Positions 208-59,754 of a DNA stretch of 64,000 nucleotides are shown one piece after another. Position 1 is the first letter of the stretch, and each line of letters starts with the position of its first letter. The notes beneath the pieces were generated by a model. The model made no database searches and was not told where the DNA came from. It was given only the letters and a program-made list of their open reading frames with translations. This DNA comes from Macrostomum lignano (lineage: Eukaryota). The position numbers and the translations under genes were made by a program. The stretch spans positions 186,001 to 250,000 of the forward strand of contig NIVC01000393.1 in the NCBI GenBank assembly GCA_002269645.1, given 5' to 3'.

Positions 208-450
208 AGACAGTGTCACTATATCGATGTCAGTATCACTATATCGGTGTCAGTATCACTATATCGGTGTCAGTATCACTATATCGGTGTCAGTGTCACT
301 ATATCGGGTCTGTATCACTATATCGGGTCTGTATCACTATATCGGGTCAGTGTCACTATATCGGTGTCAGTGTCACTATATCGGGTCAGTATCACTATAT
401 CGGGTCAGTGTCACTATATCGGGTCAGTGTCACTATATCGGTGTCAGCAT
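208..450. repeat. 19-20 bp minisatellite (CACTATATCGGTGTCAGTAT)
   Basis: Unit repeated about 12 times. The ORFs at 193-666, 213-527 and 227-505 are translations of this repeat. Confidence 0.9.
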
Positions 451-797
451 CAATATCTGTATCGCTGTCGATGTTGTCCTCTTTATTCATGTTTACGAGT
501 TATAATATCAATCGTTCAGTTCTTTGAGGGCCTTTCTGCTTCAAAAGACGTCACTACATATACATGTCAGAAAAAAACACCCAATAAAGAGAAAAAAAGT
601 TGGTCGGATAGTTTAGAATGTTTCGCTAAATCGATATTTCTTAACAATTTAGCTCTTTCAGGCTGATTTTAATTGGTTGACAGTTCACATTGAAATCGAG
701 AGTTTCAAAGCAGGCCTAAAGGAGTTTGATCAGAAGACTCAATCTCTTCGTCAAGTTCCGATTGAATTCAAAAGTACATCTGTCTTCAGCTCGACCC

Positions 798-2773
798 TCA
801 GGACAGGCATAGCGGCGCGGTGGACGATCCGACCTGCTCCACGGTCGCTCGACCGTTCGAGTCCAAGTTCGCTCCACTTGTCTTCACGATGTTCTTCGCC
901 TCTGCCGCCACAAAGCTGCCACCGCCGCCGCCGCCGCCACCCTTCTTGCCTCCACCGCCGCCGCCTCCAGAGTAGCCGCCGCCTCCACCGCCGCCAGATT
1001 TCTTTTTGCCGCCTCCGCCTCCACCGCCGCCGTAGCCGCCAAACGAGAAGTCTTCGTCACCGTTGCCCCCGCTCCAACCTTTGCCAAAACTCTCTCCGCC
1101 GAAACCACTATCTTTACCGGACCCGTCTTGGCCTGCCGACTTCCAGCCGGCGCCGGCACCGCCGTTTTCTTTTCCGGAAGTGCTCGCATGGCCGCCGTGG
1201 CCGCCTGCGCCGCCGGCACCGGCATCATCGCCGCCGCCGCTGGTCCCGGCCTCGGCGCTGCTCCCGTCAATTCCATTGCAGACGTCTTTGGATTCGCTGC
1301 CGCCACCTCCGCCCCCGCCGGCCGCCACCAGAGGCAGCGCCGTCGATGTGTCGATGCCGTTGACATAGATGAAGGTGCCGCCACCGCCACCAGCTGAGTC
1401 ATCGTCCTCTGGTGCGTCGCCGCCTGCTTTGCCAACGATAATCGCCAGGGTGATGCCTGCGGTCAGCTTGAAGTGTCCGGATACGTGGGCGCCCCTACCG
1501 CCAGGTTTGCCGCCGTCGACATTGCCGCCTCGGGCGCCCCAGGCGCTGATCTTGTAGCAGCCGGTTGTGACGATGGCGTGGGTCAAGATAGTGCCAACCT
1601 GATTGCTTCCAATAAGCGGGGCTGCAATGAATTCGTTAAGTACATTTTTTTCAAAAAGCATATTACGAGGTTTTGATTGAAACAAATAGATGAAGACTCA
1701 CCGGTCAAAGCCTGTTTGGGAGCAGTCGTAGTTGTACTCGTTGTTGTTGTTGTTTTTGGGGTCGTAGTGGTCGTCGTTGGAGTCGTGGTTGTTGTTGGAG
1801 TCGTGGTTGTTGTTGTTGGAGTCGTGGTTGTTGTTGGAGTCGTGGTCGTTGTTGTTGGAGTCGTGGTTGTTGTTGTTGGAGTCGTGGTTGTTGTTGTTGG
1901 AGTCGTGGTTGTTGTTGTTGGAGTCGTGGTTGTTGTTGTTGGAGTCGTGGTTGTTGTTGTTGGAGTCGTGGTTGTTGTTGTTGGAGTCGTAGTGGTCGTC
2001 GTTGGAGTCTTCGTTGTTGTTGGAGTCGTGGTTGTTGTTGTTGGAGTCGTAGTGGTCGTCGTTGGAGTCGTGGTTGTTGTTGGAGTAGTGGTCTTTGTTG
2101 TTGGAGTCGTGGTTGTTGTTGTTGGAGTCGTGGTTGTTGTTGTTGGAGTCGTAATTGTTGTTGTTGTTGGAGTCGTGGTTGTTGTTGTTGGAGTCGTGGT
2201 AGTCGTTGTTTTTGGAGTCGTGGTTTTTGTTGTTGGAGTCGTAACTGTTGTTGTTGGAGTCGTGGTTGTTGTTGTTGATGGAGTCGTGGTGGTTGTCGTT
2301 GTTGGAGTCGTAGTGGTTGTTGTTGCCGTTTGAGTCGTGGTTGTCGTTGTCAGAGATGTTGTTGTCGTGTCTGTAGTGGCAGCGGTTTCTCCGCAAGCAG
2401 GTCTGTTGTCCAACAGCTGCGTCAGACAGCTGGAGCCCGAACTCGACCTCCATTTGTTGGCAAGGTCACACGAGGAGCCGAGTACGCACTTTCCGGTGCT
2501 CAACGTCAAGGAGGCGATTTTTTCGCCCGGATGCAGCAACTGGAACACGGAGCATCTCATCCGCCCGATCGCGGCGCATTCAACTGCGCAGATCCGATGA
2601 TCCGTGACCCCAGAGATCTCTTTAAACGTGGCATTATTCGAAGCGCCGGTCGACAAAGGCAGCTCGATAGCGCAGAGGTTGTCCGTCGGAACCGTGAAGG
2701 AAACGCAGTCGATATTCTGGCAGGAGCAGGCGGACAGAAAGGCGAGGAGTGCAACAGTGACGGCTGCACTCAT
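798..2773 (-). CDS. Secreted protein: signal peptide, Cys-rich PAN/apple-like module, Thr-rich mucin-like stalk, ALK/LTK-type glycine-rich domain (about 631 aa, 2 exons)
   Basis: Exon 1 is 2773-1702 and exon 2 is 1621-798. The 80-bp intron 1701-1622 has a GTGAGT donor and a TTGCAG acceptor, both phase 1, joining ...KQALT-A-PLIGSNQ.... The N-terminus MSAAVTVALLAFLSACSC is hydrophobic. It is followed by a Cys pattern (ICAVEC...RCSVFQL...GKCVLG), about 200 aa of PT(5-6) repeats, and the C-terminal motifs YKISAWGARGG, GGRGAHVSGHF, LAIIVGKAGG, GGGGGTFIY, LVAAGGGGG and GGGSFV typical of the Gly_rich/ALK glycine-rich domain. Confidence 0.8.
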
Positions 2774-14228: not shown

Positions 14229-14289
14229 CTTCAAGTTCGCTGTGTGACTCATTTGGCTTTGACGACTGACAGCTTAGTGACTCTTGGTT

Positions 14290-15720
14290 CTGACATCCTT
14301 TAGTGACTCCACTTGACCCTGACATCCTTTAGTGACTCCACTTGACCCTGACATCCTTTAGTGACTCCACTTGACCCTGACATCCTTTAGTGACTCCACT
14401 TGACCCTGACATCCTTTAGTGACTCCACTTGACCCTGACATCCTTTAGTGACTCCACTTGACCCTGACATCCTTTAGTGACTCCACTTGACCCTGACATC
14501 CTTTAGTGACTCCACTTGACCCTGACATCCTTTAATGACTCCACTTGACCCTGACATCCTTTAGTGACTCCACTTGACCCTGACATCCTTTAGTGACTCC
14601 ACTTGACCCTGACATCCTTTAGTGACTCCACTTGACCCTGACATCCTTTAGTGACTCCACTTGACCCTGACATCCTTCACCAAATTACCTTATCCCTGAC
14701 ATCCTTCAGTGACTCATCCTAGCCCTGACATCCTTCAGTGACTCCACTTGACCCTGACATCCTTTAGTGACTCCACTTGACCCTGACATCCTTTAGTGAC
14801 TCCACTTGACCCTGACATCCTTCACCAAATCACCTTATCCCTGACATCCTTCAGTGACTCATCCTAGCCCTGACATCCTTCAGTGACTCATCCTAGCCCT
14901 GGCATCCTTCAGTGACTCCACTTGACCCTGACATCCTTCAGTGACTCATCCTAGCCCTGGCATCCTTCAGTGACTCCACTTGACCCTGACATCCTTCACC
15001 AAATTACCTTATCCCTGACATCCTTCAGTGACTCATCCTAGCCCTGACATCCTTCAGTGACTCCACTTGGCCCTGACCCTGACATCCTTCAGTGACATTC
15101 TACCTAGCCCTGACACCCTTCAGTGACTCATAATAGCTCTGACATCCTTCAGTGACTCATCCTAGCCCTGACATCCTTCAGTGACTTATTGTAGCCCAGA
15201 CATCCTTCAGTGACATTCTACCTAGCCCTGACATCCTTCAGTGACATTCTACCTAGCCCTGACATCCTTAAGTGACATTCTACCTAGCCCTGACATCCTT
15301 CAGTGACATTCTACCTAGCCCTGACACCCTTCAGTGACTCATCATAGCTCTGACATCCTTCAGTGACTCATCCTAGCCCTGACATCCTTCAGTGACTTAT
15401 CCTAGCCCAGACATCCTTCAGTGACATTCTATCTAGCCCTGACATCCTTCAGTGACATTCTACCTAGCCCTGACATCCTTCAGTGACTCATCATAGCCCT
15501 GACATCCTTCAGTGACATTCTACCTAACCCTGACACCCTTCAGTGACTCATCATAGCCCTGACATCCTTCAGTGACTCATCCTAGCCCAGACATCCTTCA
15601 GTGACTCATCATAGCCCTGACATCCTTCAGTGACTCATCCTAGCCCAGACATCCTTCAGTGACTCATCCTAGCCCTGACATCCTTCAGTGACTCATAGCT
15701 CTTACACCCTTCAGTGACTT
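14290..15720. repeat. 29-bp minisatellite (GTGACTCCACTTGACCCTGACATCCTTTA and variants) between RNF170 and U2SURP
   Basis: About 1.4 kb array with homogeneous 5' units and diverged 3' variants (CATCCTAG, CTACCTAG). Confidence 0.95.
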
Positions 15721-16198
15721 ATCTTGTCATTAGCATCTTTCGGTGACTTCACCTGGCTCTGTGACATTTTCACCAGTTTTTTTTACAATTAGACCACATG
15801 CCACTGTTTCTTTGACTCTGCTGTGCTGCCCGTACTGATTTCTGTTGTCTTTACTGTAAAAGTTTATTGTGCCACATTGTATCAGTTGTGTACTATTATT
15901 ATATAAATTGAAGAGTAAAATATATTTTCTAAGAATCAATGACTGGTTTTCAACTACGAGTATATTTGTCTTCTTTTTGCAATTGTTTTAGTTAAGGCTA
16001 GTTTATTTTATACAATAGATTCTAGGAATAGTTTTTAATGCTCAATTTTGCCTACTCACCGCAGTAGTATTCATCAGTACAAATTGTAACTTTTTTAACG
16101 GATTCAATAATGTTTTGATTTAAATTGATGATTTGCTAAGTGCAAAGCCCTATTGAAGATTGGTAATATTTTTAATACTCGATATAAAAGCGGCAGTT

Positions 16199-23794
<7,596 letters not shown>

Positions 23795-24049
23795 TGGAGG
23801 AGATGCGGTTAACTACTATTAGTAACCTGTTACGCTTGTCTATGCCGTTAATAAATTAAGCTTTCTACTGCCTGTAATTAACAATACAGTCTGTTCGTGA
23901 AGCGTCGGATGTTCGATTTTCTTTGCTTGTGTAATCTGCGCTTATAACTGGTTGATGATAATGGGGTAATTGTCTTCAAATAGTTCCTTTCTGATTTATA
24001 TATTTTTATACTGACTTAGTGAGTCTCCCAAGCACGCACTGACATACTC

Positions 24050-24870
24050 TACAAACAGCACTGACAGTTTCTCGAAACAGACACTTTCAGTCTAAAAACA
24101 GGCACTGACAGTCTCTTAACTCTGGCACTGACAGTCTCTTAAAACAGGCACTGACAGTCTTAAAACAGGCACTGACAGTCTCTCAAAACAGGCACTGACA
24201 GTCTCTCAAAACAGGCACTGACAGTCTCTTAAAACAGGCACTGACAGTCTCTTAAAACAGGCACTGACAGTCTCTTAAAACAGGCACTGACAGTCTCTCA
24301 AAACAGGCACTGACAGTCTCTTAAAACAGGCACTGACAGTCTCTTAAAACAGGCACTGACAGTCTCTCAACTCTGGCACTGACAGTCTCTCAAAACAGGA
24401 ACTGACAGTCACAAAACAGGCACTGACAGTCTCCCATTACAGACACTGACAGTCTCCCAAAACAGGCACTGACAGTCTCCCAAAGCAGACACTGACAGTC
24501 TCCCAAAACAGGCACTGACAGTCTCCCAAAGCAGACACTGACAGTCTCTCAAAACAGGCACTGACAGTCTCCTAAAACAGACACTGACAGTCACTCAAAA
24601 GGGCACTGACAGTCTCCTAAAACAGGCACTGACAATCTCCCAAAACAGGCACTGACAATCTCCCAAAACAGGCACTGACAGTCTCTTAAGACAGGCGCTG
24701 ACAGTCTTTTAAAACAGGCACTGACAGTCTCAAAACAGTCACTGACAGTCTCAAAACAGGAACTGACAGTCCATCAAAACAGGAACTGACAGTCCATCAA
24801 AACAGGAACTGACAGTGTCTCAAAACAGGCACTGACAGTCTATCAAAACAGGCACTGACAGTCTCCTAAA
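24050..24870. repeat. 22-24 bp minisatellite (CTGACAGTCTCTCAAAACAGGCA) between U2SURP and ASAH1
   Basis: About 35 units. Confidence 0.95.
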
Positions 24871-24997
24871 ACACTCGCAATCCCCCCAAAGCGTTAGTCA
24901 GTTTTAGATTCAGCAAAAGATTAGCAAATCATGTTACTGAAAGTAGAGCAAATAAAATATTAAATTCAACCCATTGCAGCCAACTCTTTCTACTGCC

Positions 24998-27240
24998 ATG
25001 CGCCTCCTCGTCCTGTCGCTGTTCTGCCTGTCCCTGGCCGCGCCTCGCTTGGCCCAGCCGCCGCCGCCGACGGCTCAGTGTGTGGCCGACGCCTACCCGC
25101 CCCCGCCGGACACTCTCGTGCCAACCGCTCGCGTCAATCTGGACGAACCGCCGGCCACCCGATGGCGCCAGGTTGTGGCGCCGCGCGCCGCCGGAATGCG
25201 CGCCCTGTTGGGCCAATTCCGGCAGTTCCTGTTCAACCTGACCGGCTCCGACTCGCTCATGAACATCGTCGACAAGGAGATGGTGCCGCTGTCCCAGACT
25301 CTGCCTGAACCGTTTCGCAGTGAGCTGGCCGGCGTGTCGGCCCTGTCCAACCTCAGCCTGGGCGAGGTCACCCTGTTCAATGTCTTCTACGAGCTGTTCC
25401 CGCTGTGCACCTCCATTCTGGCCGAGGACTCCAGCGGCCGGCTGTTCCACGCCAGGAACATGGACTTCGGGCTGTTTCTGGGCTGGAATGTCACCAACAG
25501 CTCTTGGATTATTGCCGATTATTTGAGGCCGCTGCTGATCAATGTGGAGTTCTATAGGGGTGGCCGACTGGTGAGCATCAGTGTCCTGTGGCGTGTGATT
25601 TTGGGTGATTATGTAAACTGCTTCCCAAGTCCTCAGTAGCTGGGCCAGCCTCTCAGATCCCCAGTTGCTGTGCCAGCCTCCCAGATCCTCAGTTGCTGGG
25701 CCAGCCTCCCAGATCCTCAGTAGCTGGGCCAGCCTCCCAGATCCTCAGTAGCTGGGCCAGCCTCTCAGATCCCCAGTTTGCTGGGCCAGCCTCTCAGATC
25801 CCCAGTTTGCTATGCAAGCCTCCCAGATCCTCAGTTGCTGGGCCAGCCTCTCAGATCCCCAGTTTGCTATGCAAGCCTCCCAGATCCTCAGTTGCTGGGC
25901 CAGCCTCCCAGATCCTCAGTTGCTGGGCCAGCCTCCCAGATCCTCAGTTGCTAGGCCAGCCTCCCAGATCCTCAGTTGCTGGCCCAGCCTCCCAGATCCT
26001 CAGTTGCTGGGCCAGCCTCCCAGAGTGTCAGTTGCTGGGCCAGCCTCCCAGATCCTCAGTTGCTGGGCCACCAGCCTCCCAGATCCTCAGCTGCTGGGCC
26101 AGCCTCCCAGATCCTCAGTAGCTGGGCCAGCCTCTCAGATCCCCAGTTTGCTATGCAAGCCTCCCAGATCCTCAGTTGCTGGGCCAGCCTCCTAGATCCT
26201 CAGTTGCTGGGCCAGCCTCCCAGATCCTCAGTTGCTGGGCCAGCCTCCCAGATCCTCAGTTGCTAGGCCAGCCTCCCAGATCCTCAGTTGCTGGCCCAGC
26301 CTCCCAGATCCTCAGTTGCTGGGCCAGCCTCCCAGATCCTCAGTTGCTAGGCCAGCCTCCCAGATCCTCAGTTGCTGGCCCAGCCTCCCAGATCCTCAGT
26401 TGCTGGGCCAGCCTCCCAGAGTGTCAGTTGCTGGGCCAGCCTCCCAGAGTGTCAGTTGCTGGGCCAGCCTCCCAGATCCTCAGTTGCTGGGCCACCAGCC
26501 TCCCAGATCCTCAGTTGCTGGGCCAGCCTCCCAGAGTGTCAGTTGCTGGGCCAGCCTCCCAGATCCTCAGTTGCTGGGCCAGCCTCCCAGATTAATTATC
26601 TTCGCTGTCTATCCCCCCCCTCACCGAGCAGGTGTTTCTCTCCAGCCACTACGCCGGCTACATCGGGGTGCTTACCGGGCTCCGGCCGCACCAGTTCAGC
26701 CTGTCCGTGAACAGCCGCGTCAGCGCCAAGACCCAGAGCCTGGCCGGAGTTGTTGAGTGGTTGCTAGGCATCAGGGATCAGTACTGGCTAGGCGTTGCCA
26801 CTCGAGCTGTGCTAGAGAACGCCACCGACTATGGCCAGGCCAAGCAGCGCCTCGCCAACTGGAAGTTGATCGCTCCGGTTTACTTCATCCTTGGCGGCGC
26901 CAAACACCTGGAAGGCTGCGTGATCACCCGCGACCGAGCGGCCGGCGCCGCGGACATCTGGGAGCGGGCCGCGGCTGGCAACCACAGCTGGTACCTGCTG
27001 CAGACCAACTATGATCACTGGAAATCTCCCAATCCCATTGACAACAGGCGAGGTCCCGGCAATGCCTGCATGGCTAAGAAGGGCCAAGATGAAGCTGCCA
27101 GCTTCTCGGGTTTGTTCAACGTCCTGAGTTCGATTCCTGTACTGAACAAGCTGACGGTGTACACGGCGCTGATGCGAGTGGACGATGCCACCCTGGTGGC
27201 GTACAGGCGTCAGTGCCCTGACCCCTGCGCACCTTGGTGA
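24998..27240 (+). CDS. ASAH1: Acid ceramidase (N-acylsphingosine amidohydrolase), copy A (about 393 aa, 2 exons)
   Basis: Exons 24998-25570 and 26632-27240 (phase 0, GT-AG). Signal peptide MRLLVLSLFCLSLA. Ntn-hydrolase autocleavage/catalytic Cys in YELFPL-CTSILAED...RNMDFGLFLGWN. Further motifs YAGYIGVLTG, LIAPVYFILGG, LLQTNYDHW, DNRRGP, FNVLSSIPVLNKLTVYTALM and a C-terminal CPDPCAPW as in ASAH1 rather than NAAA. Confidence 0.95.
25630..26592. repeat. 28-bp minisatellite (CCAGCCTCCCAGATCCTCAGTTGCTGGG) filling the single ASAH1 intron
   Basis: About 34 units with interspersed variants. The GQPPRSSVA ORFs are artefacts. Confidence 0.95.
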
Positions 27241-27534
27241 CTGACGGACATGACTGTTTTATGATTTTTGAGTCTTTCTCTAATTGGTTCTGATTCTGCC
27301 ATAAAATTTATTAGTCAGGTGTTCCTTATGATTTGACTTGTGATTTAAACCTAATTTTAATTGCTCAAATTTTATATTTTACTATTGCAAGTAAATCAAG
27401 TTACAGAAATTTGGTGTTTTTCACATTTAAAATACAAAATCTTTCAAATTTACTTAATTTTTTTATTTTTTAACCTGATCTATAATTACTTTGAAAATGG
27501 AAACTTATTTTTGTCTTGATTTTCTTTTTAAAGT

Positions 27535-27727
27535 TACATAGAGATAGATAGACAGATAGATAGATAGACAGACAGAAAGATAGGTAGATAGATAGATAGA
27601 TAGATAGGTAGATAGATAGATAGACAGACAGATAGATAGATAGACAGATAGATAGATAGATAGACAGACAGATAGATGGGTACATAGATAGATAGATAGA
27701 TAGATATAGATAAATAGATAGACAGAC

Positions 27728-27792
<65 letters not shown>

Positions 27793-27868
27793 CTCGTAGA
27801 TAAATAGACAGACAGATAGATAGGTAGATAGATAGGTAGATAGATAGACAGACAGATAGATAGATAGG

Positions 27869-27930
<62 letters not shown>

Positions 27931-27982
27931 TAGATAAATAGATAGACAGACAGATAGATAGGTAGATAGACAGATAGATAGG

Positions 27983-28038
<56 letters not shown>

Positions 28039-28059
28039 CAGATAGATAGATAGACAGAC

Positions 28060-28094
<35 letters not shown>

Positions 28095-28098
28095 TAGA

Positions 28099-28174
<76 letters not shown>

Positions 28175-28242
28175 TAGATAGATAGACAGACAGATAGATA
28201 GGTAGATAGACAGATAGATAGGTAGATAGATAGGTAGATAGA

Positions 28243-28284
<42 letters not shown>

Positions 28285-28288
28285 TAGA

Positions 28289-28320
<32 letters not shown>

Positions 28321-28385
28321 TAGATAGACAGACAGACAGATAGATAGATAGATAGATAGATAGACAGATAGATAGATAGACAGAC

Positions 28386-28434
<49 letters not shown>

Positions 28435-28455
28435 AATAGATAGGTAGATAGATAT
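27535..28455. repeat. (GATA/GACA)n microsatellite
   Basis: Direct reading. Confidence 0.97.
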
Positions 28456-28879
28456 GGTGTATATTGTATTGTAGATAGATGAGTCATATGGTCACCAGAT
28501 CATTCAGACCTATTTGTAAATTATAGATAAACGAGTATTTAAGCTACCGTTTAGCTTACGGTAGTTAAGCAGATGTCAATTCAAGAATCCAGTGCGTGCA
28601 ATAAAGTACATTTGAACTCTAGCAATCTGGCATGCAGATCGCATCACATTCGATTGTTCAGTTGATTGCGAGCGGCATCCTCTGATCCGAGAGGGTTCCA
28701 ATGTCGCGCACCACCCCAACTTGACGGAGGCAAGTTGAGAAAGCCGAAAAATCCAAAATGTCACCGCATTTATTGCCCCAATCGGTTGGGCGCTTCCTAT
28801 CGCGCAGCGAGACAGTTGGGGGCTCGTAACTGATTCATAAAATATATACAATGTAGGTTACCATAACATCCCATGTATG

Positions 28880-29420
28880 ATTGGGTAGACTGGATAGATT
28901 AGATAGACTGCTTAGACCGGATAAACTGTAGTTGGGTAGACCATTGGTAGATTGGGTAGACTGGGTTGATTGGGTAAACTGGGTAGATTGGGTAGACTGG
29001 GTAGACGGGATAGATTTGGTAGATTGGGTAGACTGGGTAGACTGGGTTGACTGGGTAGACTGTGTAGTTGGTTATAGACTGGGTAGATTGGGTAGACTGG
29101 GTAGATTGGGTAGACTGGGTAGATTGGGTAAACTGGGTAGATTGGGTAGACTGGGTAGACGGGATAGATTTGGTAGAATGGGTAGATTTGGTAGACTGGG
29201 TAGACTGGGTTGGCTGGGTAGACTGTGTAGTTGGTTATAGACTGGGTAGACTGGGTAGATTGGGTAGAATGTGTAGATTGGGTAGATTGGGTAGACTGGG
29301 TAGACTGGGTAGATTTGGTAGAATGGGTAGATTGGGTAGATTGGGTAGACTGGGTAGACTGGATAGACTTGGGTAGACTGGGTTGGCTGGGTAGACTGGG
29401 TAGATTGGTTAGACTATCTA
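28880..29420. repeat. 9-bp minisatellite (TGGGTAGAY)
   Basis: Direct reading. The DWVDWV and LGRLGR ORFs are artefacts. Confidence 0.95.
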
Positions 29421-29979
29421 GAAAAGTTCGAACATGTCAACCCTATATTTATTATTATGTTGACTGTCTTCGACGATGTGAAAATTCTTTGAATTACAGC
29501 AGTAAGCGCGGATTGAACATGTAACAGCATCTAACAATCTAATTGTAGTAGATTGTGTAGACAGTCAGCCAGTCAGTCAGATTAAAGGTCAAATGCGATA
29601 CATGTATAGAGTCAGTCTGTCTTGTAGTTTTTCTAATATGAACAAACAAAGCATCTTGATGTACTTTGTATCACTACATGTAGTTGATAAATCGGCATAT
29701 AGTCTGCCATTTGCAATGTGCACTGGCCCAGCTTCACTTCCTAATTCTTCGTGGAGATGAAGCTCTGAGGCTATCAGCTGCAGAAATCTTACCTGCACTT
29801 ATAAATTGGATTGCTGTGTTAAAAAAAGTTTTCGAAGTGGAAAAGAATACGATTCATCTGGGGTCTCCGGCAGGATTACCCGTTCTGTCAAGGACAACTA
29901 CCAATACTAGAATTCGGATTGGAAACACTTCAAATTAGGAGCGACCCGGGTGCTTGTGCCCCCTCAAATGAAAGTGCAT

Positions 29980-30665
29980 GGCGCCCCTCAGATGAAGTTG
30001 CGCCGTCCCAGATGAAGTGGCGCCCTCTCAGATAAAAATGGCGCCGTCTCAGATAAAAATGGCCCCGTCTCAGATAAAAATGGCGCCGTCTCAGATGAAA
30101 ACGGCGCCGTCTCAGATAAAAATGGCGCCGTCTCAGATGAAAATGGCGCCGTCTCAGATGAAAATGGCGCCGTCTCAGATGAAAATGGCGCCGTCTCAAA
30201 TAAAAATGGCGCCGCCTCAGATGAAAATGGCGCCGTCTCAGATAAAAATGGCGCCGTCTCAGATAAAAATGGCGCCGTCTCAGATGAAGTGGCGCCTTCT
30301 CAGATAAAGTGGCGCTCTATTCAAAGGAAGTGGCGTCCCCTCAGATGATAAAAATGGCGCCGTCTCAGATATAAATGGCGCCGTCTCAGATGAAAATGGT
30401 GCCGCCTCAGATGAAAATGGCGCCGCCACAGATGAAAATAGCGCCGCCTCAGATGATGTTGCGCCGTCTCAAATAAAAATGGCGCCGTCTCAGATAAAAA
30501 TGGCGCCGTCTCAGATGAAAATGGCGCCGTCTCAAATAAAAATGGCGCCGTCTCAGATAAAAATGGCGCCGTCTCAGATGAAAATGGCGCCGTCTCAGAT
30601 AAAAAGGGCGCCGTCTCAGATGAAAATGGCGCTGCCTCAGATGAAAATGGCGCCGTCTCAGATGA
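29980..30665. repeat. 21-bp minisatellite (ATGGCGCCGTCTCAGATAAAA)
   Basis: The MAPSQIK repeats in the ORF track are translations of this array. Confidence 0.95.
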
Positions 30666-31537
30666 ATCCTTCAAATGAAGACCCCTGACTATACTCGTAT
30701 TAACACCTGCTGTTTAAAGTTACCATTATTTAAGCATAAGTTAGTTAGATAATTAAATCTCCTCTCAAGTTGGCCAACATAGAGCTCGTTGAGTTGACTG
30801 TTTAATTGTTTTTTTCAACCAGTTTCCAAATCCAGGCTCCTGCAGGATGCTGCTATGCGTCAGACATTCGGGGAAGCTGCGACCGCATGCAGCTGGTATC
30901 GTTATTTTTTCCCAACCCTGCCGTCCACCACCACTTTTGCCTCTCCCCAGCCTCCCCTCTCTCTCAGCTGCCCCACTTCCCGAAGTTCTCTACTGACCTC
31001 TCGACTGCGGCGTCAGCCTTACCGTCCCTCTCTCTCTCTCTCTGTCTTCATCCTTCCGATTCTGCAGCGCAAGCAATCGAAAGCAGCCGTGTTACCTTTT
31101 GTATATTGCACCTTGATTGGTTGGCCCCTCCGTCTTGTGTCAGCCCTACCAGCAGGCTGTATGCAACAAGTAATCTTCTTCTAGGAGGACTGTCCAGCAG
31201 GCTTATCCCCCCTCCCCCCGGGGGGAAAGGCTGTCTCCGCCGGTTTCGGGGTAGCCAAAAATGGAACCTGCGGAGCGCCACCGCATTCTGTCGCGAAGCC
31301 AAAAACTTTCTCTGATTCGTCACCGCCGCTTTTCTGCTTCTAGTAGCAGAAACTTCTGTACCGATTGCTTGCGCCCTCTCAGATCTGTATCATATCTGAA
31401 ATCCAAAGACTGCAGTACTTGAGTCTGCCGACCGCTTGGAGACAGAGAAGCCACCCTGAGCTGGTCTTGGTGGGTATCCGTGAGTGAAATTCTATGCAAC
31501 ATTGGCAAAATTATTGAACAAAAGTTTTCTTTGTACT

Positions 31538-32205
31538 GATCTGCTTCCAATGCAGCTGTTGTTGATCTGCTTCCAATGCAGCTGTTGTTGATCTGCTTCC
31601 AATGCAGCTGTTGATGATCTGCTTCCAATGTAGCTGTTGATGATCTGCTTCCAATGCAGCTGTTGATGATCTGCTTCCAATGCAGCTGTTGATGATCTGC
31701 TTCCAATGCAGCTGATGATCTGCTTCCAATGTAGCTGTTGTTGATCTGCTTCCAATGCAGCTGTTGATGATCTGCTTCCAATGCAGCTGTTGATGATCTG
31801 CTTCCAATGCAGCTGTTGATGATCTGCTTCCAATGCAGCTGTTGATGATCTGCTTCCAATGCAGCTGTTGATGATCTGCTTCCAATGCAGCTGTTGATGA
31901 TCTGCTTCCAATACAGCTGTTGATGATCTGCTTCCAATGCAGCTGTTGATGATCTGCTTCCAATGCAGCTGTTGATGATCTGCTTCCAATGCAGCTGTTG
32001 ATGATCTGCTTCCAATGCAGCTGTTGTTGATCTGCTTCCAATGCAGCTGTTGATGATCTGCTTCCAATGCAGCTGTTGATGATCTGCTTCCAATGCAGCT
32101 GTTGTTGATCTGCTTCCAATGCAGCTGTTGTTGATCTGCTTCCAATGCAGCTGTTGTTGATCTGCTTCCAATGCAGCTGTTGATGATCTGCTTCCAATGC
32201 AGCTG
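31538..32205. repeat. 26-bp minisatellite (CTGCTTCCAATGCAGCTGTTGATGAT)
   Basis: About 25 units. The same repeated peptide appears in all three minus frames. Confidence 0.95.
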
Positions 32206-32830
32206 TCCTGTCATCAATAAATTCATTTATTCAAAATTCCTACTAGGCAAGCCAGTTAACAGCTCAACTGTACCAAGTTCAGTTTGTAGTTTTTTGTTGC
32301 AAAGATCCATCTTGTTACAGAACCTCTTTCAAATTGACTATTGCTCTTTAAAATTTTACAACTCTTTAAAAATGCCGGTGTTGTAAAAGCCTTCGCTGAT
32401 GCGTCCGTCAGACAAAAACGGCAGAAAATTTTTTTAATATGCACGCGCAGTCTTGCATTCTGTCCAGATTCTGGGGCTAGATCGGCTGCTGCGATGCCTA
32501 GCGTGAGAAATTGCCGAAATTTACACCCGCTTGCCTCTGAAAGCAGAAATTGCTGTGAAAAAGAAAGACGCAGTCAACTCCTAACCCTACTAAAGACCTT
32601 ATGCAAGCAAGTTTACAAGCTCAGCTGCAGATATTATTTCAGTCTCAAGGTCTCTGTTTGGTATTTTTTTTAGAAAAGGAAACTTCCATTCAAAACCGGC
32701 CTTCGATAGAAGCTGCAAACTGCATTCATCCCTCCCAGATCCCCAGAGAATCCACAAACTCAACTCGAACACCTGCTGTAACCTGGCTGGAGCTTCGAGT
32801 GACGTGGGCAGCTGGAAGCAGCACAGAGGC

Positions 32831-46053
<13,223 letters not shown>

Positions 46054-48550: not shown

Positions 48551-49147
48551 CCTTCAGTGACTCATCTTATCATTAGCATCTTTCGGTGACTTCACCTGGC
48601 TCTGTGACATTTTCACCAGTTTTTTTTACAATTAGACCACATGCCACTGTTTCTTTGACTCTGCTGTGCTGCCCGTACTGATTGCTGTTGTCTTTACTGT
48701 AAAAACATCCACTTCTGCGCATTGTATCAGTTGTTGCTAAGCTTCTAGATATTCAAGCGTCTATGATTATCAGATAATTTGTGCTTTTGTGCCTTTTAAA
48801 AAGTTTATTGTGTCATTGTATCAGTTGTGTACTATTATTATATAAATTGAAAAGTACAATATATTTTCTAAGAATCAATTACTGGTTTTCAACTACGAGT
48901 ATATTTGTCTTCTTTTTGCAATTGTTTTAGTTAAGGCTAGTTTATTTTATATAATAGATTCTAGGAATTGTTTTCTAAAAGTTTTAATGCTCAATTTTGC
49001 CTACTCACCGCAGTAGTATTCATCAGTACAAATTGTAACTTTTTTAACGGATTCAAAAATGTTTTGATTTAAATTGATGATTTGCTAAGTGCAAAGCCCT
49101 ATTGAAGATTGGTAATATTTTTAATACTCGATATAAAAGCGGTAGTT

Positions 49148-55320
<6,173 letters not shown>

Positions 55321-56438
55321 TGGAGGAGATGCGGTTAATTACAATTAGTAACCTGTTACGCTTGTCTATGCCGTTAATAAATTAAGCTTTCTACTGCCTG
55401 TAATTAACAATACAGTCTGTTCGTGAAGCGTCGGATGTTCGATTTTCTTTGCTAATTTTTCCTAACTTGTGTAATCTGCGCTTATAACTGGTTGATGATA
55501 ATGGGGTAATTGTCTTTGAGTTGTTCCTTTCTGATTTTTAAGAGTATATATTTTTATGCTGACAGACTTACAGTCTCTTAACAAGCACCGACAGTCTCTC
55601 AAAACAGGCACTGACAGTCTCTCAAAACAGGCACTGACAGTCTCTCAAAACAGGCACTGACAGTCTCTCAAAACAGGCACTGACAGTCTTCCAAAGCAGA
55701 CACTGACAGTCTCTCAAAACAGACACTGACAGTCTCTCAAAACAGGCACTGACAGTCTTCCAAAGCAGACACTGACAGTCTCTCAAAACAGACACTGACA
55801 GTCTCTCAAAACAAGCACCGACAGTCTCTCAAAACAGGCACTGACAGTCTCTCAAAACAGGCACTGACAGTCTCTCAAAACAGGCACTGACAGTCTCTCA
55901 AAACAGGCACTGAAAGTCTCTCAAAACAGACACTGACAGTCTCTCAAAACAGGCACTGACAGTCTCTCAAAACAGGCACTGACAGTCTCCTAAAACAGAC
56001 ACTGACAGTCACTCAAAAGGGCACTGACAGTCTCCTAAAACAGGCACTGACAATCTCCCAAAACAGGCACTGACAGTCTCTTAAGACAGGCGCTGACAGT
56101 CTTTTAAAACAGGCACTGACAGTCTCAAAACAGTCACTGACAGTCTCAAAACAGGAACTGACAGTCCATCAAAACAGGAACTGACAGTCCATCAAAACAG
56201 GAACTGACAGTGTCTCAAAACAGGAACTGACAGTCCATCAAAACAGGAACTGACAGTGTCTCAAAACAGGCACTGACAGTCTATCAAAACAGGCACTGAC
56301 AGTCTCCTAAAACACTCGCAATCCCCCCAAAGCGTTAGTCAGTTTTAGATTCAGCAAAAGATTAGCAAATCATGTTACTGAAAGTAGAGCAAATAAAATA
56401 TTAAATTCAACCCATTGCAGCCAACTCTTTCTACTGCC

Positions 56439-58682
56439 ATGCGCCTCCTCGTCCTGTCGCTGTTCTGCCTGTCCCTGGCCGCGCCTCGCTTGGCCCAGCC
56501 GCCGCCGCCGACGGCTCAGTGTGTGGCCGACGCCTACCCGCCCCCGCCGGACACTCTCGTGCCAACCGCTCGCGTCAATCTGGACGAACCGCCGGCCACC
56601 CGATGGCGCCAGGTTGTGGCGCCGCGCGCCGCCGGAATGCGCGCCCTGTTGGGCCAATTCCGGCAGTTCCTGTTCAACCTGACCGGCTCCGACTCGCTCA
56701 TGAACATCGTCGACAAGGAGATGGTGCCGCTGTCCCAGACTCTGCCTGAACCGTTTCGCAGTGAGCTGGCCGGCGTGTCGGCCCTGTCCAACCTCAGCCT
56801 GGGCGAGGTCACCCTGTTCAATGTCTTCTACGAGCTGTTCCCGCTGTGCACCTCCATTCTGGCCGAGGACTCCAGCGGCCGGCTGTTCCACGCCAGGAAC
56901 ATGGACTTCGGGCTGTTTCTGGGCTGGAATGTCACCAACAGCTCTTGGATTATTGCCGATTATTTGAGGCCGCTGCTGATCAATGTGGAGTTCTATAGGG
57001 GTGGCCGACTGGTGAGCATCAGTGTCCTGTGGCGTGTGATTTTGGGTGATTATGTAAACTGCTTCCCAAGTCCTCAGTAGCTGGGCCAGCCTCTCAGATC
57101 CCCAGTTGCTGTGCCAGCCTCCCAGATCCTCAGTTGCTGGGCCAGCCTCCCAGATCCTCAGTAGCTGGGCCAGCCTCCCAGATCCTCAGTAGCTGGGCCA
57201 GCCTCTCAGATCCCCAGTTTGCTGGGCCAGCCTCTCAGATCCCCAGTTTGCTATGCAAGCCTCCCAGATCCTCAGTTGCTGGGCCAGCCTCTCAGATCCC
57301 CAGTTTGCTATGCAAGCCTCCCAGATCCTCAGTTGCTGGGCCAGCCTCCCAGATCCTCAGTTGCTGGGCCAGCCTCCCAGATCCTCAGTTGCTAGGCCAG
57401 CCTCCCAGATCCTCAGTTGCTGGCCCAGCCTCCCAGATCCTCAGTTGCTGGGCCAGCCTCCCAGAGTGTCAGTTGCTGGGCCAGCCTCCCAGATCCTCAG
57501 TTGCTGGGCCACCAGCCTCCCAGATCCTCAGCTGCTGGGCCAGCCTCCCAGATCCTCAGTAGCTGGGCCAGCCTCTCAGATCCCCAGTTTGCTATGCAAG
57601 CCTCCCAGATCCTCAGTTGCTGGGCCAGCCTCCTAGATCCTCAGTTGCTGGGCCAGCCTCCCAGATCCTCAGTTGCTGGGCCAGCCTCCCAGATCCTCAG
57701 TTGCTAGGCCAGCCTCCCAGATCCTCAGTTGCTGGCCCAGCCTCCCAGATCCTCAGTTGCTGGGCCAGCCTCCCAGATCCTCAGTTGCTAGGCCAGCCTC
57801 CCAGATCCTCAGTTGCTGGCCCAGCCTCCCAGATCCTCAGTTGCTGGGCCAGCCTCCCAGAGTGTCAGTTGCTGGGCCAGCCTCCCAGAGTGTCAGTTGC
57901 TGGGCCAGCCTCCCAGATCCTCAGTTGCTGGGCCACCAGCCTCCCAGATCCTCAGTTGCTGGGCCAGCCTCCCAGAGTGTCAGTTGCTGGGCCAGCCTCC
58001 CAGATCCTCAGTTGCTGGGCCAGCCTCCCAGATTAATTATCTTCGCTGTCTATCTCCCCCCCTCACCGAGCAGGTGTTTCTCTCCAGCCACTACGCCGGC
58101 TACATCGGGGTGCTTACCGGGCTCCGGCCGCACCAGTTCAGCCTGTCCGTGAACAGCCGCGTCAGCGCCAAGACCCAGAGCCTGGCCGGAGTTGTTGAGT
58201 GGTTGCTAGGCATCAGGGATCAGTACTGGCTAGGCGTTGCCACTCGAGCTGTGCTAGAGAACGCCACCGACTATGGCCAGGCCAAGCAGCGCCTCGCCAA
58301 CTGGAAGTTGATCGCTCCGGTTTACTTCATCCTTGGCGGCGCCAAACACCTGGAAGGCTGCGTGATCACCCGCGACCGAGCGGCCGGCGCCGCGGACATC
58401 TGGGAGCGGGCCGCGGCTGGCAACCACAGCTGGTACCTGCTGCAGACCAACTATGATCACTGGAAATCTCCCAATCCCATTGACAACAGGCGAGGTCCCG
58501 GCAATGCCTGCATGGCTAAGAAGGGCCAAGATGAAGCTGCCAGCTTCTCGGGTTTGTTCAACGTCCTGAGTTCGATTCCTGTACTGAACAAGCTGACGGT
58601 GTACACGGCGCTGATGCGAGTGGACGATGCCACCCTGGTGGCGTACAGGCGTCAGTGCCCTGACCCCTGCGCACCTTGGTGA
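56439..58682 (+). CDS. ASAH1: Acid ceramidase copy B (about 393 aa, 2 exons), protein identical to copy A in the ORF track
   Basis: Exons 56439-57011 and 58074-58682. Translations are identical to copy A. Confidence 0.93.
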
Positions 58683-59173
58683 CTGACGGACATGACTGTT
58701 TTATGATTTTTGAGTCTTTCTCTAATTGGTTCTGATTCTGCCATAAAATTTATTAGTCAGGTGTTCCTTATGATTTGACTTGTGATTTAAACCTAATTTT
58801 AATTGCTCAAATTTTATATTTTACTATTGCAAGTAAATCAAGTTACAGAAATTTGGTGTTTTTCACATTTAAAATACAAAATCTTTCAAATTTACTTAAT
58901 TTTTTTATTTTTTAACCTGATCTATAATTACTTTGAAAATGGAAACTTATTTTTGTCTTGATTTTCTTTTTAAAGTTACATAGAGATAGATAGACAGATA
59001 GATAGATAGACAGACAGAAAGATAGGTAGATAGATAGATAGATAGATAGATAGGTAGATAGATAGATAGACAGACAGATAGATAGATAGACAGATAGATA
59101 GATAGATAGACAGACAGATAGATGGGTACATAGATAGATAGATAGATAGATATAGATAAATAGATAGACAGAC

Positions 59174-59242
<69 letters not shown>

Positions 59243-59274
59243 CTCGTAGATAGATAGACAGACAGATAGATAGG

Positions 59275-59390
<116 letters not shown>

Positions 59391-59394
59391 TAGA

Positions 59395-59454
<60 letters not shown>

Positions 59455-59514
59455 TAGATAGATAGACAGACAGATAGATAGGTAGATAGACAGATAGATA
59501 GGTAGATAGATAGG

Positions 59515-59556
<42 letters not shown>

Positions 59557-59560
59557 TAGA

Positions 59561-59592
<32 letters not shown>

Positions 59593-59657
59593 TAGATAGA
59601 CAGACAGACAGATAGATAGATAGATAGATAGATAGACAGATAGATAGATAGACAGAC

Positions 59658-59700
<43 letters not shown>

Positions 59701-59705
59701 CAGAC

Positions 59706-59754
<49 letters not shown>

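What the first reader, a model, noticed from the sequence alone, without database searches (positions are those of the whole stretch)
798..2773. Secreted PAN-like + mucin stalk + polyglycine (ALK/LTK-type) protein with no TM or kinase
Seen: two ORFs splice in phase into one 631-aa protein with a signal peptide, a Cys-rich module, about 200 aa of PT(5-6) repeats and a C-terminal glycine-rich domain ending in a stop with no transmembrane segment. Established: in ALK/LTK this domain forms a polyglycine-II helix bundle with a TNF-like sheet and binds ligand, and similar PGII bundles occur in phage adhesin gp38 and snow-flea antifreeze protein. Inference: a two-headed, heavily O-glycosylated soluble molecule that may act as a mucus/adhesive cross-linker, lectin-like effector or ALK-pathway decoy. 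I do not recognise this architecture.
Basis: partly seen in the sequence, partly recalled or inferred. Interest (0 to 1): 0.75.

Follow-up and report, generated by a model that had tools for sequence, protein, structure and literature searches.

The report
Secreted mucin-stalked protein with ALK-type glycine domain
This is a real two-exon animal gene for a secreted protein with a small cysteine-rich (Apple-like) head, a long sugar-bearing threonine/proline stalk and a complete polyglycine binding domain of the kind found in the ALK receptor. That domain is much closer to phage tail-fibre and bacterial surface proteins than to ALK, and the gene is an uncharacterised variant rather than a new kind of thing.

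Summary
On the minus strand, exon 1 (2773-1702) and exon 2 (1621-798) join in phase across an 80-nt, AT-rich GTGAGT...TTGCAG intron to give a 631-aa protein. It has a signal peptide, a nine-cysteine module, 219 aa of PTTTTTT repeats, a glycine-rich domain and a stop. The only hydrophobic segment is the signal peptide.

- **C-terminal domain:** it is a complete TNF-like + polyglycine ("TG") domain. A family profile hits ALK/LTK structures at 1e-30. The AlphaFold model (pLDDT 91) matches only ALK/LTK/SCD-2 in the PDB.
- **Nearest relatives:** these are phage and bacterial PEP-CTERM proteins (35-49% identity, PHROG 8e-27), against 21-24% for ALK/LTK.
- **N-terminal module:** it has one relative among 1.84 billion representative proteins, Macrostomum lignano A0A1I8IMG2 ("Apple domain-containing protein"). 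That protein has both end modules but no stalk. PAN/Apple similarity is moderate: hhalign beats 300 of 300 column shuffles, Pfam finds nothing, and the structure model is poor.

Most likely this is a secreted two-headed tether in mucus or apical matrix. That function is inferred. An ALK decoy is unlikely. I rate it a new variant of a known kind, of moderate interest.

The parts
1702..2773 (-). Exon 1 (1072 nt): start codon, signal peptide, Cys module and Thr/Pro stalk. It ends in phase 1 at the donor CCG|GTGAGT.
   Evidence: upstream in-frame TAA 30 nt before the ATG
2720..2773 (-). Signal peptide, residues 1-18 (MSAAVTVALLAFLSACSC). The cleavage site is inferred to lie near ACS|CQ or CSC|QN.
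   Evidence: It is the only Kyte-Doolittle peak above 1.5 in the protein. No predictor was available, so the assignment is inferred.
2393..2719 (-). Nine-cysteine N-terminal module, residues 19-127, Apple/PAN-like. It carries a conserved NAT sequon at N47.
   Evidence: It is 51-57% identical to M. lignano P0121, with all nine Cys conserved. hhalign to solved PAN/Apple domains scores 23.0 against a shuffle maximum of 18.2. There is no Pfam or PDB sequence hit. The AF2 model is poor.
1718..2374 (-). Mucin-like stalk, residues 134-352: 176 Thr and 28 Pro in 219 aa, mostly PTTTTTT units.
   Evidence: TRF finds a period of 21 bp and 27.6 copies at 1746-2325. The stalk is absent from the M. lignano homologue.
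1622..1701 (-). Intron, 80 nt, GTGAGT...TTGCAG, GC 0.30.
   Evidence: Retaining it shifts the frame to a stop at 1583.
798..1621 (-). Exon 2 (824 nt): the whole TNF-like + polyglycine domain, a 10-residue tail and the TGA stop (800-798).
831..1601 (-). TNF-like + glycine-rich ("TG", PF12810-type) domain, residues ~365-621.
   Evidence: Homologues align end to end. The profile hits ALK/LTK at 1e-30. The AF2 model has pLDDT 91.3 and pTM 0.90. Foldseek finds ALK/LTK/SCD-2 only in the PDB and 64 viral proteins. PHROG 22713 scores 8.3e-27.
801..830 (-). C-terminal tail GSSTAPLCLS with a conserved Cys. No hydrophobic GPI-type tail follows.
   Evidence: It aligns with the ...GTASSDLCA end of P0121.
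482..673 (-). Candidate polyadenylation signals: ATTAAA at 673-668 (124 nt after the stop) and AATAAA at 487-482 (310 nt after the stop).
   Evidence: motif match only

Best explanation
This is a functional two-exon gene for a 631-aa secreted glycoprotein made of three parts:
- an N-terminal nine-cysteine Apple/PAN-like module;
- a ~220-residue Thr/Pro tandem-repeat stalk, which would be densely O-glycosylated and extended (about 55 nm at ~0.25 nm per residue);
- a complete free-standing TNF-like + polyglycine ("TG") domain.

**Family.** It belongs to a small lineage-restricted family. The only other detectable member is Macrostomum lignano A0A1I8IMG2, which has the same two heads without the stalk. 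The stalk is therefore a later tandem-repeat insertion into the linker.

**Type of TG domain.** It is the phage/bacterial type, not the receptor type.

**Inferred mechanism.** The protein works outside the cell as a two-headed tether or spacer in mucus or apical matrix.
- The Apple-like head anchors to a protein or carbohydrate partner.
- The stalk projects the TG head away from it.
- The variable loop tips of the polyglycine bundle recognise a second partner, as they do in phage fibres.

**Shown versus inferred.** The gene model, the domain identities and the relatives are shown. Secretion, glycosylation, the binding partners and the tissue are inferred.
For: - **Gene model.** It rests. The intron is AT-rich and canonical. 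GC3 is 0.70 in the N-terminal module and 0.69 in the TG exon, not far below the 0.77-0.84 of the neighbouring ASAH1 exons. The TG exon is therefore host-like and not a contaminant.
- **Collinearity.** The protein aligns with P0121 through both modules and the C-terminal tail. P0121's own best non-self TG match is this protein.
- **TG domain by sequence.** 869 proteins score E <= 1e-3, the best at 3e-27, and they align end to end. All 18 invariant columns of the 94-sequence family alignment are present.
- **TG domain by profile and fold.** The profile hits ALK/LTK at 1e-30. The model has pLDDT 91.3. Foldseek returns only ALK/LTK/SCD-2 from the PDB, at E 2e-10 to 2e-6.
- **Phage/bacterial type.** The top hit, P0001, lies in a phage-like contig. 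PHROG 22713 scores 8e-27. The best viral models reach TM 0.64-0.69 at 30-33% identity, against TM 0.50-0.58 at 21-24% for human ALK and LTK.
- **Precedent for the binding role.** In phage Pam3 gp24 a TNF-like + glycine-rich domain is the receptor-binding tip (PMC9608196).
- **Precedent for the architecture.** C. elegans LET-653 combines PAN domains, a mucin-like region and a C-terminal ZP domain in an apical matrix protein (PMC4970718).
- **No membrane anchor.** There is no TM or GPI-type tail.
Against: - I had no transcript, proteomic or expression data, so the splice, the secretion and the tissue are unverified.
- Pfam's own cutoff for PF12810 is narrowly missed (21.2 against 24.5 bits).
- The Apple/PAN assignment is only moderately supported. 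There is no Pfam or PDB sequence hit, hhalign probability is 16%, and the AF2 model has pLDDT 38.
- Nothing identifies a binding partner for either head.
- The window ends 797 nt past the stop, so alternative 3' exons beyond it cannot be formally excluded.
Confidence: 0.6

Rival explanations
1. Microbe-binding mucus protein. The phage/bacterial-type TG head recognises bacterial surface structures, while the Apple head and the mucin stalk hold it in the mucus layer. It would act as an innate-immune trap or a tool for managing the microbiota. This is a more specific version of the best explanation.
For: The closest TG relatives are phage virion or tail-fibre-like proteins and bacterial cell-surface proteins. 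In Pam3 gp24 the same module is proposed to recognise the host receptor. The stalk is mucin-like.
Against: There is no binding data. The loop tips that would determine specificity are not conserved with any characterised phage protein. Bacterial PEP-CTERM members have no known ligand.
Confidence: 0.18
2. Structural or adhesive secretion component, for example of a glue, cement, eggshell or reproductive gland. The glycine-rich, lysine-tipped domain and the mucin stalk would provide material properties rather than specific recognition.
For: The only relative of the whole protein is from Macrostomum lignano. From my own knowledge, not tested here, that flatworm has well-studied glandular adhesives. 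The polyglycine hairpin tips carry KKKS and KK. The stalk is a long PTS region.
Against: The TG domain is a compact folded module (pLDDT 91), not a low-complexity glycine-rich fibre. A literature search turned up no link between this family and flatworm adhesion.
Confidence: 0.12
3. Soluble ALK-pathway decoy. A secreted TG domain would sequester the ligand of the animal's own ALK receptor.
For: It has the same fold and common ancestry with the ligand-binding region of ALK/LTK. It is secreted, with no TM or kinase domain.
Against: It is only 21-24% identical to human ALK and LTK and 18% to SCD-2. Single-sequence E-values against ALK are 0.14-0.99, while phage and bacterial proteins are far closer. 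After the domain there is only a 10-residue tail, so there is no EGF-like module. From my own knowledge, the ALK ligand-binding region also uses helical and EGF-like elements adjacent to the TG domain, and these are absent here.
Confidence: 0.04
4. Not one gene. The two ORFs are separate, or they are pseudogenic remnants, and the long ORFs are a by-product of GC-rich and repeat sequence.
For: Repeat and GC-rich DNA here gives long ORFs in several frames on both strands. I had no transcript evidence.
Against: The correct frame carries conserved residues throughout both modules, and both modules are collinear in P0121. Exon 2 alone has no signal peptide or ATG; its ORF opens with TTG. The intron is canonical and AT-rich. 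No frameshifts or stops interrupt the frame.
Confidence: 0.05

Closest known systems
Macrostomum lignano A0A1I8IMG2 (P0121), named "Apple domain-containing protein" by UniProt's automatic annotation; uncharacterised
   Same: It has the same nine-cysteine N-terminal module (51-57% identity, all Cys and the NAT sequon conserved). It also has the same TG domain and the same short C-terminal ..LC tail. Identity is 45% end to end.
   Different: Its linker is only ~25 residues where the window protein has the 219-aa Thr/Pro stalk. The deposited model lacks a start Met, and a cluster mate (P0126) is a chimeric model.
Free-standing PF12810 proteins of phages and bacteria, such as phage Pam3 tail fibre gp24, PHROG 22713, and PEP-CTERM, MYXO-CTERM or VPDSG-CTERM surface proteins of Planctomycetes and Verrucomicrobia
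   Same: These are the nearest sequence relatives of the TG domain: 35-49% identity over the full length, E down to 3e-27. They are also the best structural matches (TM 0.64-0.69). In Pam3 the module is an extracellular receptor-binding tip.
   Different: They have an N-terminal fibre shaft or a C-terminal sorting signal instead of an Apple-like module plus mucin stalk. They are prokaryotic or viral genes without introns.
ALK / LTK / C. elegans SCD-2 extracellular TNF-like + glycine-rich (TG) domain
   Same: They are homologous and share the fold. The profile scores 1e-30. Foldseek gives E 2e-10 to 2e-6 and TM 0.5-0.58, and they are the only significant PDB hits.
   Different: Identity is only 18-24%. 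The window protein has no EGF-like module, TM helix, kinase, MAM or LDLa domain. ALK has an insertion between the two matched stretches that the free-standing family lacks.
C. elegans LET-653 (PAN/Apple domains + mucin-like linker + ZP domain), an apical extracellular matrix protein
   Same: It follows the same design logic: a secreted protein with PAN-type head(s), a Ser/Thr-rich mucin region and a C-terminal interaction domain (PMC4970718).
   Different: Its C-terminal module is a ZP domain rather than a TG domain. I did not look for sequence homology. This is an analogy of architecture only.
Polyglycine-II bundles of phage S16 gp38 and snow-flea antifreeze protein
   Same: They also contain glycine-rich PGII-type lattices (general knowledge; gp38 is discussed in PMC9608196).
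   Different: Foldseek did not recover them among the 21 PDB matches with E <= 0.001, and they lack the TNF-like sandwich. I saw no evidence of homology.

Membership tests
PF12810 / ALK_LTK_GRD (TNF-like + polyglycine TG domain) superfamily | Score above Pfam's gathering threshold | tested here: not met
   21.2 bits against a cutoff of 24.5, E 3e-4. The M. lignano relative P0069 also falls just short, at 23.8 bits.
PF12810 / ALK_LTK_GRD (TNF-like + polyglycine TG domain) superfamily | Significant full-length homology to proteins that carry the domain | tested here: met
   869 proteins score E <= 1e-3, the best at 3e-27, and many are annotated PF12810. Alignments cover residues ~7-270 of 274. 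All 18 invariant columns of the 94-sequence alignment are present.
PF12810 / ALK_LTK_GRD (TNF-like + polyglycine TG domain) superfamily | Profile match to solved TG domains, covering both the TNF-like strands and the glycine-rich part | tested here: met
   ALK and LTK chains score 9e-31 to 1e-25 in two stretches, and SCD-2 scores 1e-13.
PF12810 / ALK_LTK_GRD (TNF-like + polyglycine TG domain) superfamily | Fold: a beta-sandwich with an inserted glycine-rich lattice | tested here: met
   The AF2 model has pLDDT 91.3 and pTM 0.90, with strands at both ends. About 140 central residues have no helix or strand yet score pLDDT 81-97 per 10-residue block. Foldseek finds only ALK/LTK/SCD-2 at E <= 1e-3.
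ALK/LTK receptor tyrosine kinases | Transmembrane helix and intracellular kinase domain | tested here: not met
   The stop codon comes 10 residues after the TG domain. The signal peptide is the only hydrophobic segment. Pfam finds no kinase domain. The homologue P0121 ends at the same point.
ALK/LTK receptor tyrosine kinases | EGF-like module following the TG domain; MAM and LDLa modules in ALK | tested here: not met
   Only the tail GSSTAPLCLS follows the domain, and there are no such Pfam hits.
ALK/LTK receptor tyrosine kinases | Binding of an ALKAL, Jeb or HEN-1 type ligand | not testable with these tools
   This needs biochemistry.
PAN/Apple domain | Match to Pfam PAN models or to solved PAN/Apple sequences | tested here: not met
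   There is no Pfam hit at E <= 10 for the window module or for P0121. A two-sequence profile finds no PDB hit at E <= 10.
PAN/Apple domain | Core motif (helix C-x3-C, then strand C-x-x-F, then strand C-x-L) aligned by profile-profile comparison | tested here: inconclusive
   hhalign against FXI apple 1-4, plasminogen PAp and HGF N aligns exactly this core, with P 0.0016 and probability 16%. The score is 23.0, while 300 column shuffles give mean 10.8, sd 2.1 and maximum 18.2. I checked the reference sequences against the PDB.
PAN/Apple domain | PAN fold | tested here: inconclusive
   The AF2 model from the two-sequence alignment has pLDDT 38, so a fold search would be meaningless. UniProt's name for the homologue is a label, not a test.
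Mucin-like (PTS) domain proteins | Long Pro/Thr/Ser tandem-repeat region | tested here: met
   The region is 219 aa, 80% Thr and 13% Pro, with a 21-bp unit repeated 27.6 times.
Mucin-like (PTS) domain proteins | Dense O-glycosylation | not testable with these tools
   This needs glycoproteomics.
Gel-forming mucins | VWD, C8, TIL and cystine-knot oligomerisation modules | tested here: not met
   Pfam finds no such domains.

The most novel reading that the evidence does not exclude
An animal lineage carries a free-standing, phage/bacterial-type TG domain as the working end of a mucin-tethered secreted protein. The domain would have been either retained from the pre-receptor ancestor of the ALK ligand-binding domain or acquired horizontally and since adapted to host codon usage. 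If it binds microbial surfaces, it would be the first functional non-kinase TG protein in animals. It would also be a living model for how ALK's unusual ligand-binding domain arose from an adhesin-type module.
Probability: 0.15. Interest if true: 0.75.

Novelty: new variant of a known kind. Interest (0 to 1): 0.48.

Why it matters
The TNF-like + polyglycine domain is known in animals almost only as the ligand-binding region of the ALK/LTK receptors. Here it sits in a secreted, non-kinase animal protein, on a mucin stalk, fused to an Apple-like head, and in a form closer to phage tail fibres than to ALK. That gives a concrete case for asking two things: what this fold binds outside receptor signalling, and where ALK's extracellular domain came from. 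It also flags a small uncharacterised flatworm-linked family. Public names for related M. lignano proteins ("PE-PGRS family protein", "Apple domain-containing protein") are automatic and in part misleading. The practical importance is modest until expression and binding data exist.

Tried and rejected
- **Single-sequence searches are too weak for the TG domain.** Pfam scores 21.2 bits, below the cutoff. PDB phmmer gives E 0.09-1, with unrelated reductases ranked above ALK. A family profile was needed.
- **The word-index search missed the N-terminal homologue.** It found nothing for the N-terminal module, while the full HMMER search found P0121. The other four hits of that search (P0122-P0125) are CCCH zinc-finger repeat proteins. 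I rejected them as matches of cysteine pattern and composition only.
- **The N-terminal structure prediction failed.** The model has pLDDT 38, so I ran no fold search on it.
- **The organism stays unidentified.**
  - Exact look-ups of two window ORFs were not on record.
  - The neighbouring ASAH1 exon has its best hit at only 57% identity, with no Macrostomum hit.
  - The species is therefore an unnamed animal whose only family-specific relative is from M. lignano.
- **No paralogue in the window.** A tblastn search found no second copy of either end module.
- **NCBIfam gave no hit**.
- **BLASTP with composition adjustment badly under-aligns the glycine-rich domain**. MAFFT and HMMER were used instead.
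- **Literature searches found nothing on this family.** They covered non-kinase animal TG proteins and Macrostomum glycine-rich or PE-PGRS proteins.
- **Contamination or very recent horizontal transfer is rejected.** GC3 of the TG exon (0.69) matches the N-terminal module (0.70), the exon is spliced to an animal-type exon, and the window carries ordinary animal genes.
Full report

ORF 1583..2773(-) opens with MSAAVTVALLAFLSACSC... and runs through a cysteine-rich stretch into a long Thr/Pro repeat. ORF 798..1685(-) carries a glycine-rich sequence.

Splicing 2773..1702 to 1621..798 removes an 80-nt intron (GTGAGT...TTGCAG). It joins the frames through a split codon and gives 1896 nt, which is 631 aa plus TGA.

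- The intron is AT-rich, with GC 0.30, against 0.48 for the stalk and 0.66 for exon 2.
- If the intron is retained, the frame runs to a stop at 1583, and exon 2 has no ATG or signal peptide of its own.
- The ATG at 2773 is the first start codon after an in-frame TAA 30 nt upstream.
- ATTAAA and AATAAA motifs lie 124 and 310 nt after the stop.
- A hydropathy scan finds a single hydrophobic segment, the N-terminal signal peptide. The C-terminal tail (GSSTAPLCLS) is too short and too polar for a TM or GPI signal.
- The stalk (residues 134-352) has 176 Thr and 28 Pro in 219 residues. It is made of 28 P-initiated units, mostly PTTTTTT, encoded by a 21-bp repeat of 27.6 copies.

I had no transcript data. 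The splice is supported indirectly by a collinear homologue, described in section 3.

**2. The C-terminal domain.** Alone, the sequence narrowly misses Pfam's cutoff for PF12810 ALK_LTK_GRD (21.2 against 24.5 bits). It also barely registers against ALK/LTK chains in the PDB (E 0.14-0.99).

It does have many real relatives.

- 869 proteins score E <= 1e-3, the best at 3e-27, and they align across essentially the whole 274 residues.
- Most are ~300-aa bacterial proteins with PEP-CTERM, MYXO-CTERM or VPDSG-CTERM sorting signals.
- A few are eukaryotic: two Macrostomum lignano proteins, the choanoflagellate Stephanoeca, and a BACK-domain protein.
- A published fungal case also exists (PMC4859500).

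A 94-sequence alignment used as a profile hits every ALK and LTK extracellular structure at 9e-31 to 1e-25. It hits C. elegans SCD-2 at 1e-13. Two stretches match, covering the TNF-like strands and the glycine-rich part through the last strands.

AlphaFold2 with that alignment gives pLDDT 91.3 and pTM 0.90. The model has beta-strands at both ends and about 140 confidently placed residues without helix or strand. Foldseek against the PDB returns only ALK, LTK and SCD-2 TG domains as significant (E 2e-10 to 2e-6, TM 0.50-0.58, 18-24% identity). Everything else has E > 1.

**The domain is not of the receptor type.**

- The best hit, P0001, sits in a compact phage-like contig with an M15 peptidase and DUF3310.
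- The domain matches PHROG 22713 at 8.3e-27.
- Foldseek against predicted viral structures gives 64 hits at E <= 1e-3. Many are cyanophage and Caulobacter-phage virion proteins. The top ones are better than any ALK match (TM 0.64-0.69, 30-33% identity).
- A solved example of this class is the tail fibre gp24 of cyanophage Pam3. Its TNF-like + glycine-rich domain is the receptor-binding tip, and its authors noted the resemblance to SCD-2 (PMC9608196).

GC3 of the TG exon (0.69) equals that of the N-terminal module (0.70). It is not far below the neighbouring ASAH1 gene (0.77-0.84). This is a resident, host-adapted gene, not a contaminant or a recent transfer.

**3. The N-terminal module and the family.**

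- Pfam finds nothing.
- The word-index search finds nothing.
- A two-sequence profile finds nothing in the PDB.

An exhaustive HMMER scan of 1.84 billion representative proteins finds exactly one true relative, P0121 (E 3.5e-20, 57% identity). The four other hits are CCCH zinc-finger repeats, which I rejected.

P0121 is UniRef100_A0A1I8IMG2 from Macrostomum lignano, auto-named "Apple domain-containing protein". With the stalk removed, the window protein aligns with it end to end at 45% identity. The following are conserved:

- all nine N-terminal cysteines;
- the NAT sequon;
- the Cys in the first TG strand;
- the short C-terminal ..LC tail.

P0121 has a ~25-residue linker where the window protein has the 219-residue stalk. 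P0121's TG domain is closer to the window's than to any bacterial protein (75 against <= 45 bits).

This shows three things. The two modules belong to one polypeptide. The protein ends right after the TG domain. The stalk is a later tandem-repeat expansion in the linker.

**Is the module PAN/Apple?** The AF2 model was unusable (pLDDT 38).

- hhalign aligns the window's CAVEC-x7-CSVFQL...CVLG onto the canonical C-x3-C...C-x-x-F...C-x-L core, with P 0.0016 but probability only 16%.
- The score of 23.0 exceeds all 300 column-shuffled controls (mean 10.8, sd 2.1, maximum 18.2).

I therefore call it Apple/PAN-like with moderate support, not proven.

**4. Surroundings.** The window is animal DNA with GC 0.467.

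- It carries a Surp-module gene and an acid ceramidase gene, inside a large segmental duplication (15858-32774 against 48799-64000).
- It contains many microsatellites.
- It contains a second, unrelated Thr/Pro ORF at ~36 kb.
- No second copy of either end module is present.

The species could not be named. Window ORFs are not on record. The ASAH1 exon's best hit is 57% identical, with no Macrostomum hit.

**5. How it most likely works.**

- **Shown:** a secreted-type precursor with two folded end modules separated by a PTS stalk, and no membrane anchor.
- **Established knowledge:** PTS repeats are densely O-glycosylated and extended. PAN/Apple modules mediate protein or carbohydrate binding. 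In phage fibres the loop tips of the polyglycine bundle bind the target.
- **Inference:** a two-headed extracellular tether in mucus or apical matrix. The Apple-like head anchors, and the TG head sits on a ~55-nm stalk recognising a second partner.

C. elegans LET-653 (PAN domains + mucin region + ZP domain) is an architectural precedent among apical matrix proteins (PMC4970718).

More specific versions, such as a microbe-binding mucus protein or a gland adhesive component, are possible but untested. The ALK-decoy idea is unlikely, because the domain is far from ALK and lacks the neighbouring modules.

**6. Novelty and verdict.** The domain family is known (Pfam PF12810; phage and bacterial members; ALK/LTK structures). 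A stalk-less version of this very protein exists, uncharacterised, in M. lignano.

What is new is the mucin-stalked architecture. It is also now recognised that an animal secreted protein carries a phage/bacterial-type TG domain fused to an Apple-like head. That makes it a new variant of a known kind. It is moderately interesting, mainly for the origin and non-receptor uses of the ALK ligand-binding fold.

Noticed in passing
window 211-456: A 19-bp tandem repeat (CAGTATCACTATATCGGGT, 12.6 copies, 92% matches) lies just beyond the gene's putative 3' UTR.
   Followed up: no
window 15858-32774 vs 48799-64000: A large segmental duplication at 86-97% identity carries a Surp-module exon and an acid ceramidase gene in both copies. 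The second copy runs to the end of the window.
   Followed up: partly
window 25238-25573 + 26626-27240 (copy at 56679-57023 + 58032-58682): The acid ceramidase (ASAH1) gene appears to have only two coding exons. Its single ~1-kb intron is filled by a tandem repeat (25620-26592). The best database hit is only 57% identical, so the source species seems absent from the protein collection.
   Followed up: partly
window 35926-36717 (+): A second Thr/Pro mucin-like ORF (PTTTTT units) has no Pfam hit and no similarity to the end modules of the gene studied here. Its gene structure is unknown.
   Followed up: partly
window 42526-43536 (+): This ORF begins with collagen-like G-X-Y stretches and a glycine run before running into a microsatellite. 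It has no Pfam hit.
   Followed up: no
window 17223-17912, 27470-28487, 33083-33745, 58947-59807: Long tetranucleotide microsatellites generate spurious 200-320-aa "SIYLSIYL / SVCLSVCL" ORFs on both strands.
   Followed up: no
window 14259-15761 and 18407-20163: Two further long internal tandem-repeat arrays show up as self-matches at 75-88% identity.
   Followed up: no
P0126 (M. lignano, MetaClust UPI0007A20D54): This 1892-aa public gene model fuses the P0121 gene to two pyruvate-kinase copies and repeat-derived sequence. It is a chimeric prediction that hides the true family architecture.
   Followed up: partly
method note (vs 35): The word-index homology search reported no hit for the N-terminal module. 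The collection nevertheless holds P0121, which shares several exact words with the query and scores 3.5e-20 in the exhaustive search.
   Followed up: yes
P0069 / P0045 (M. lignano): Two other M. lignano proteins with the TG domain are auto-named "PE-PGRS family protein", a mycobacterial label that reflects glycine content only. P0069 has an N-terminal region that aligns weakly to the Cys module but lacks most of its cysteines.
   Followed up: partly
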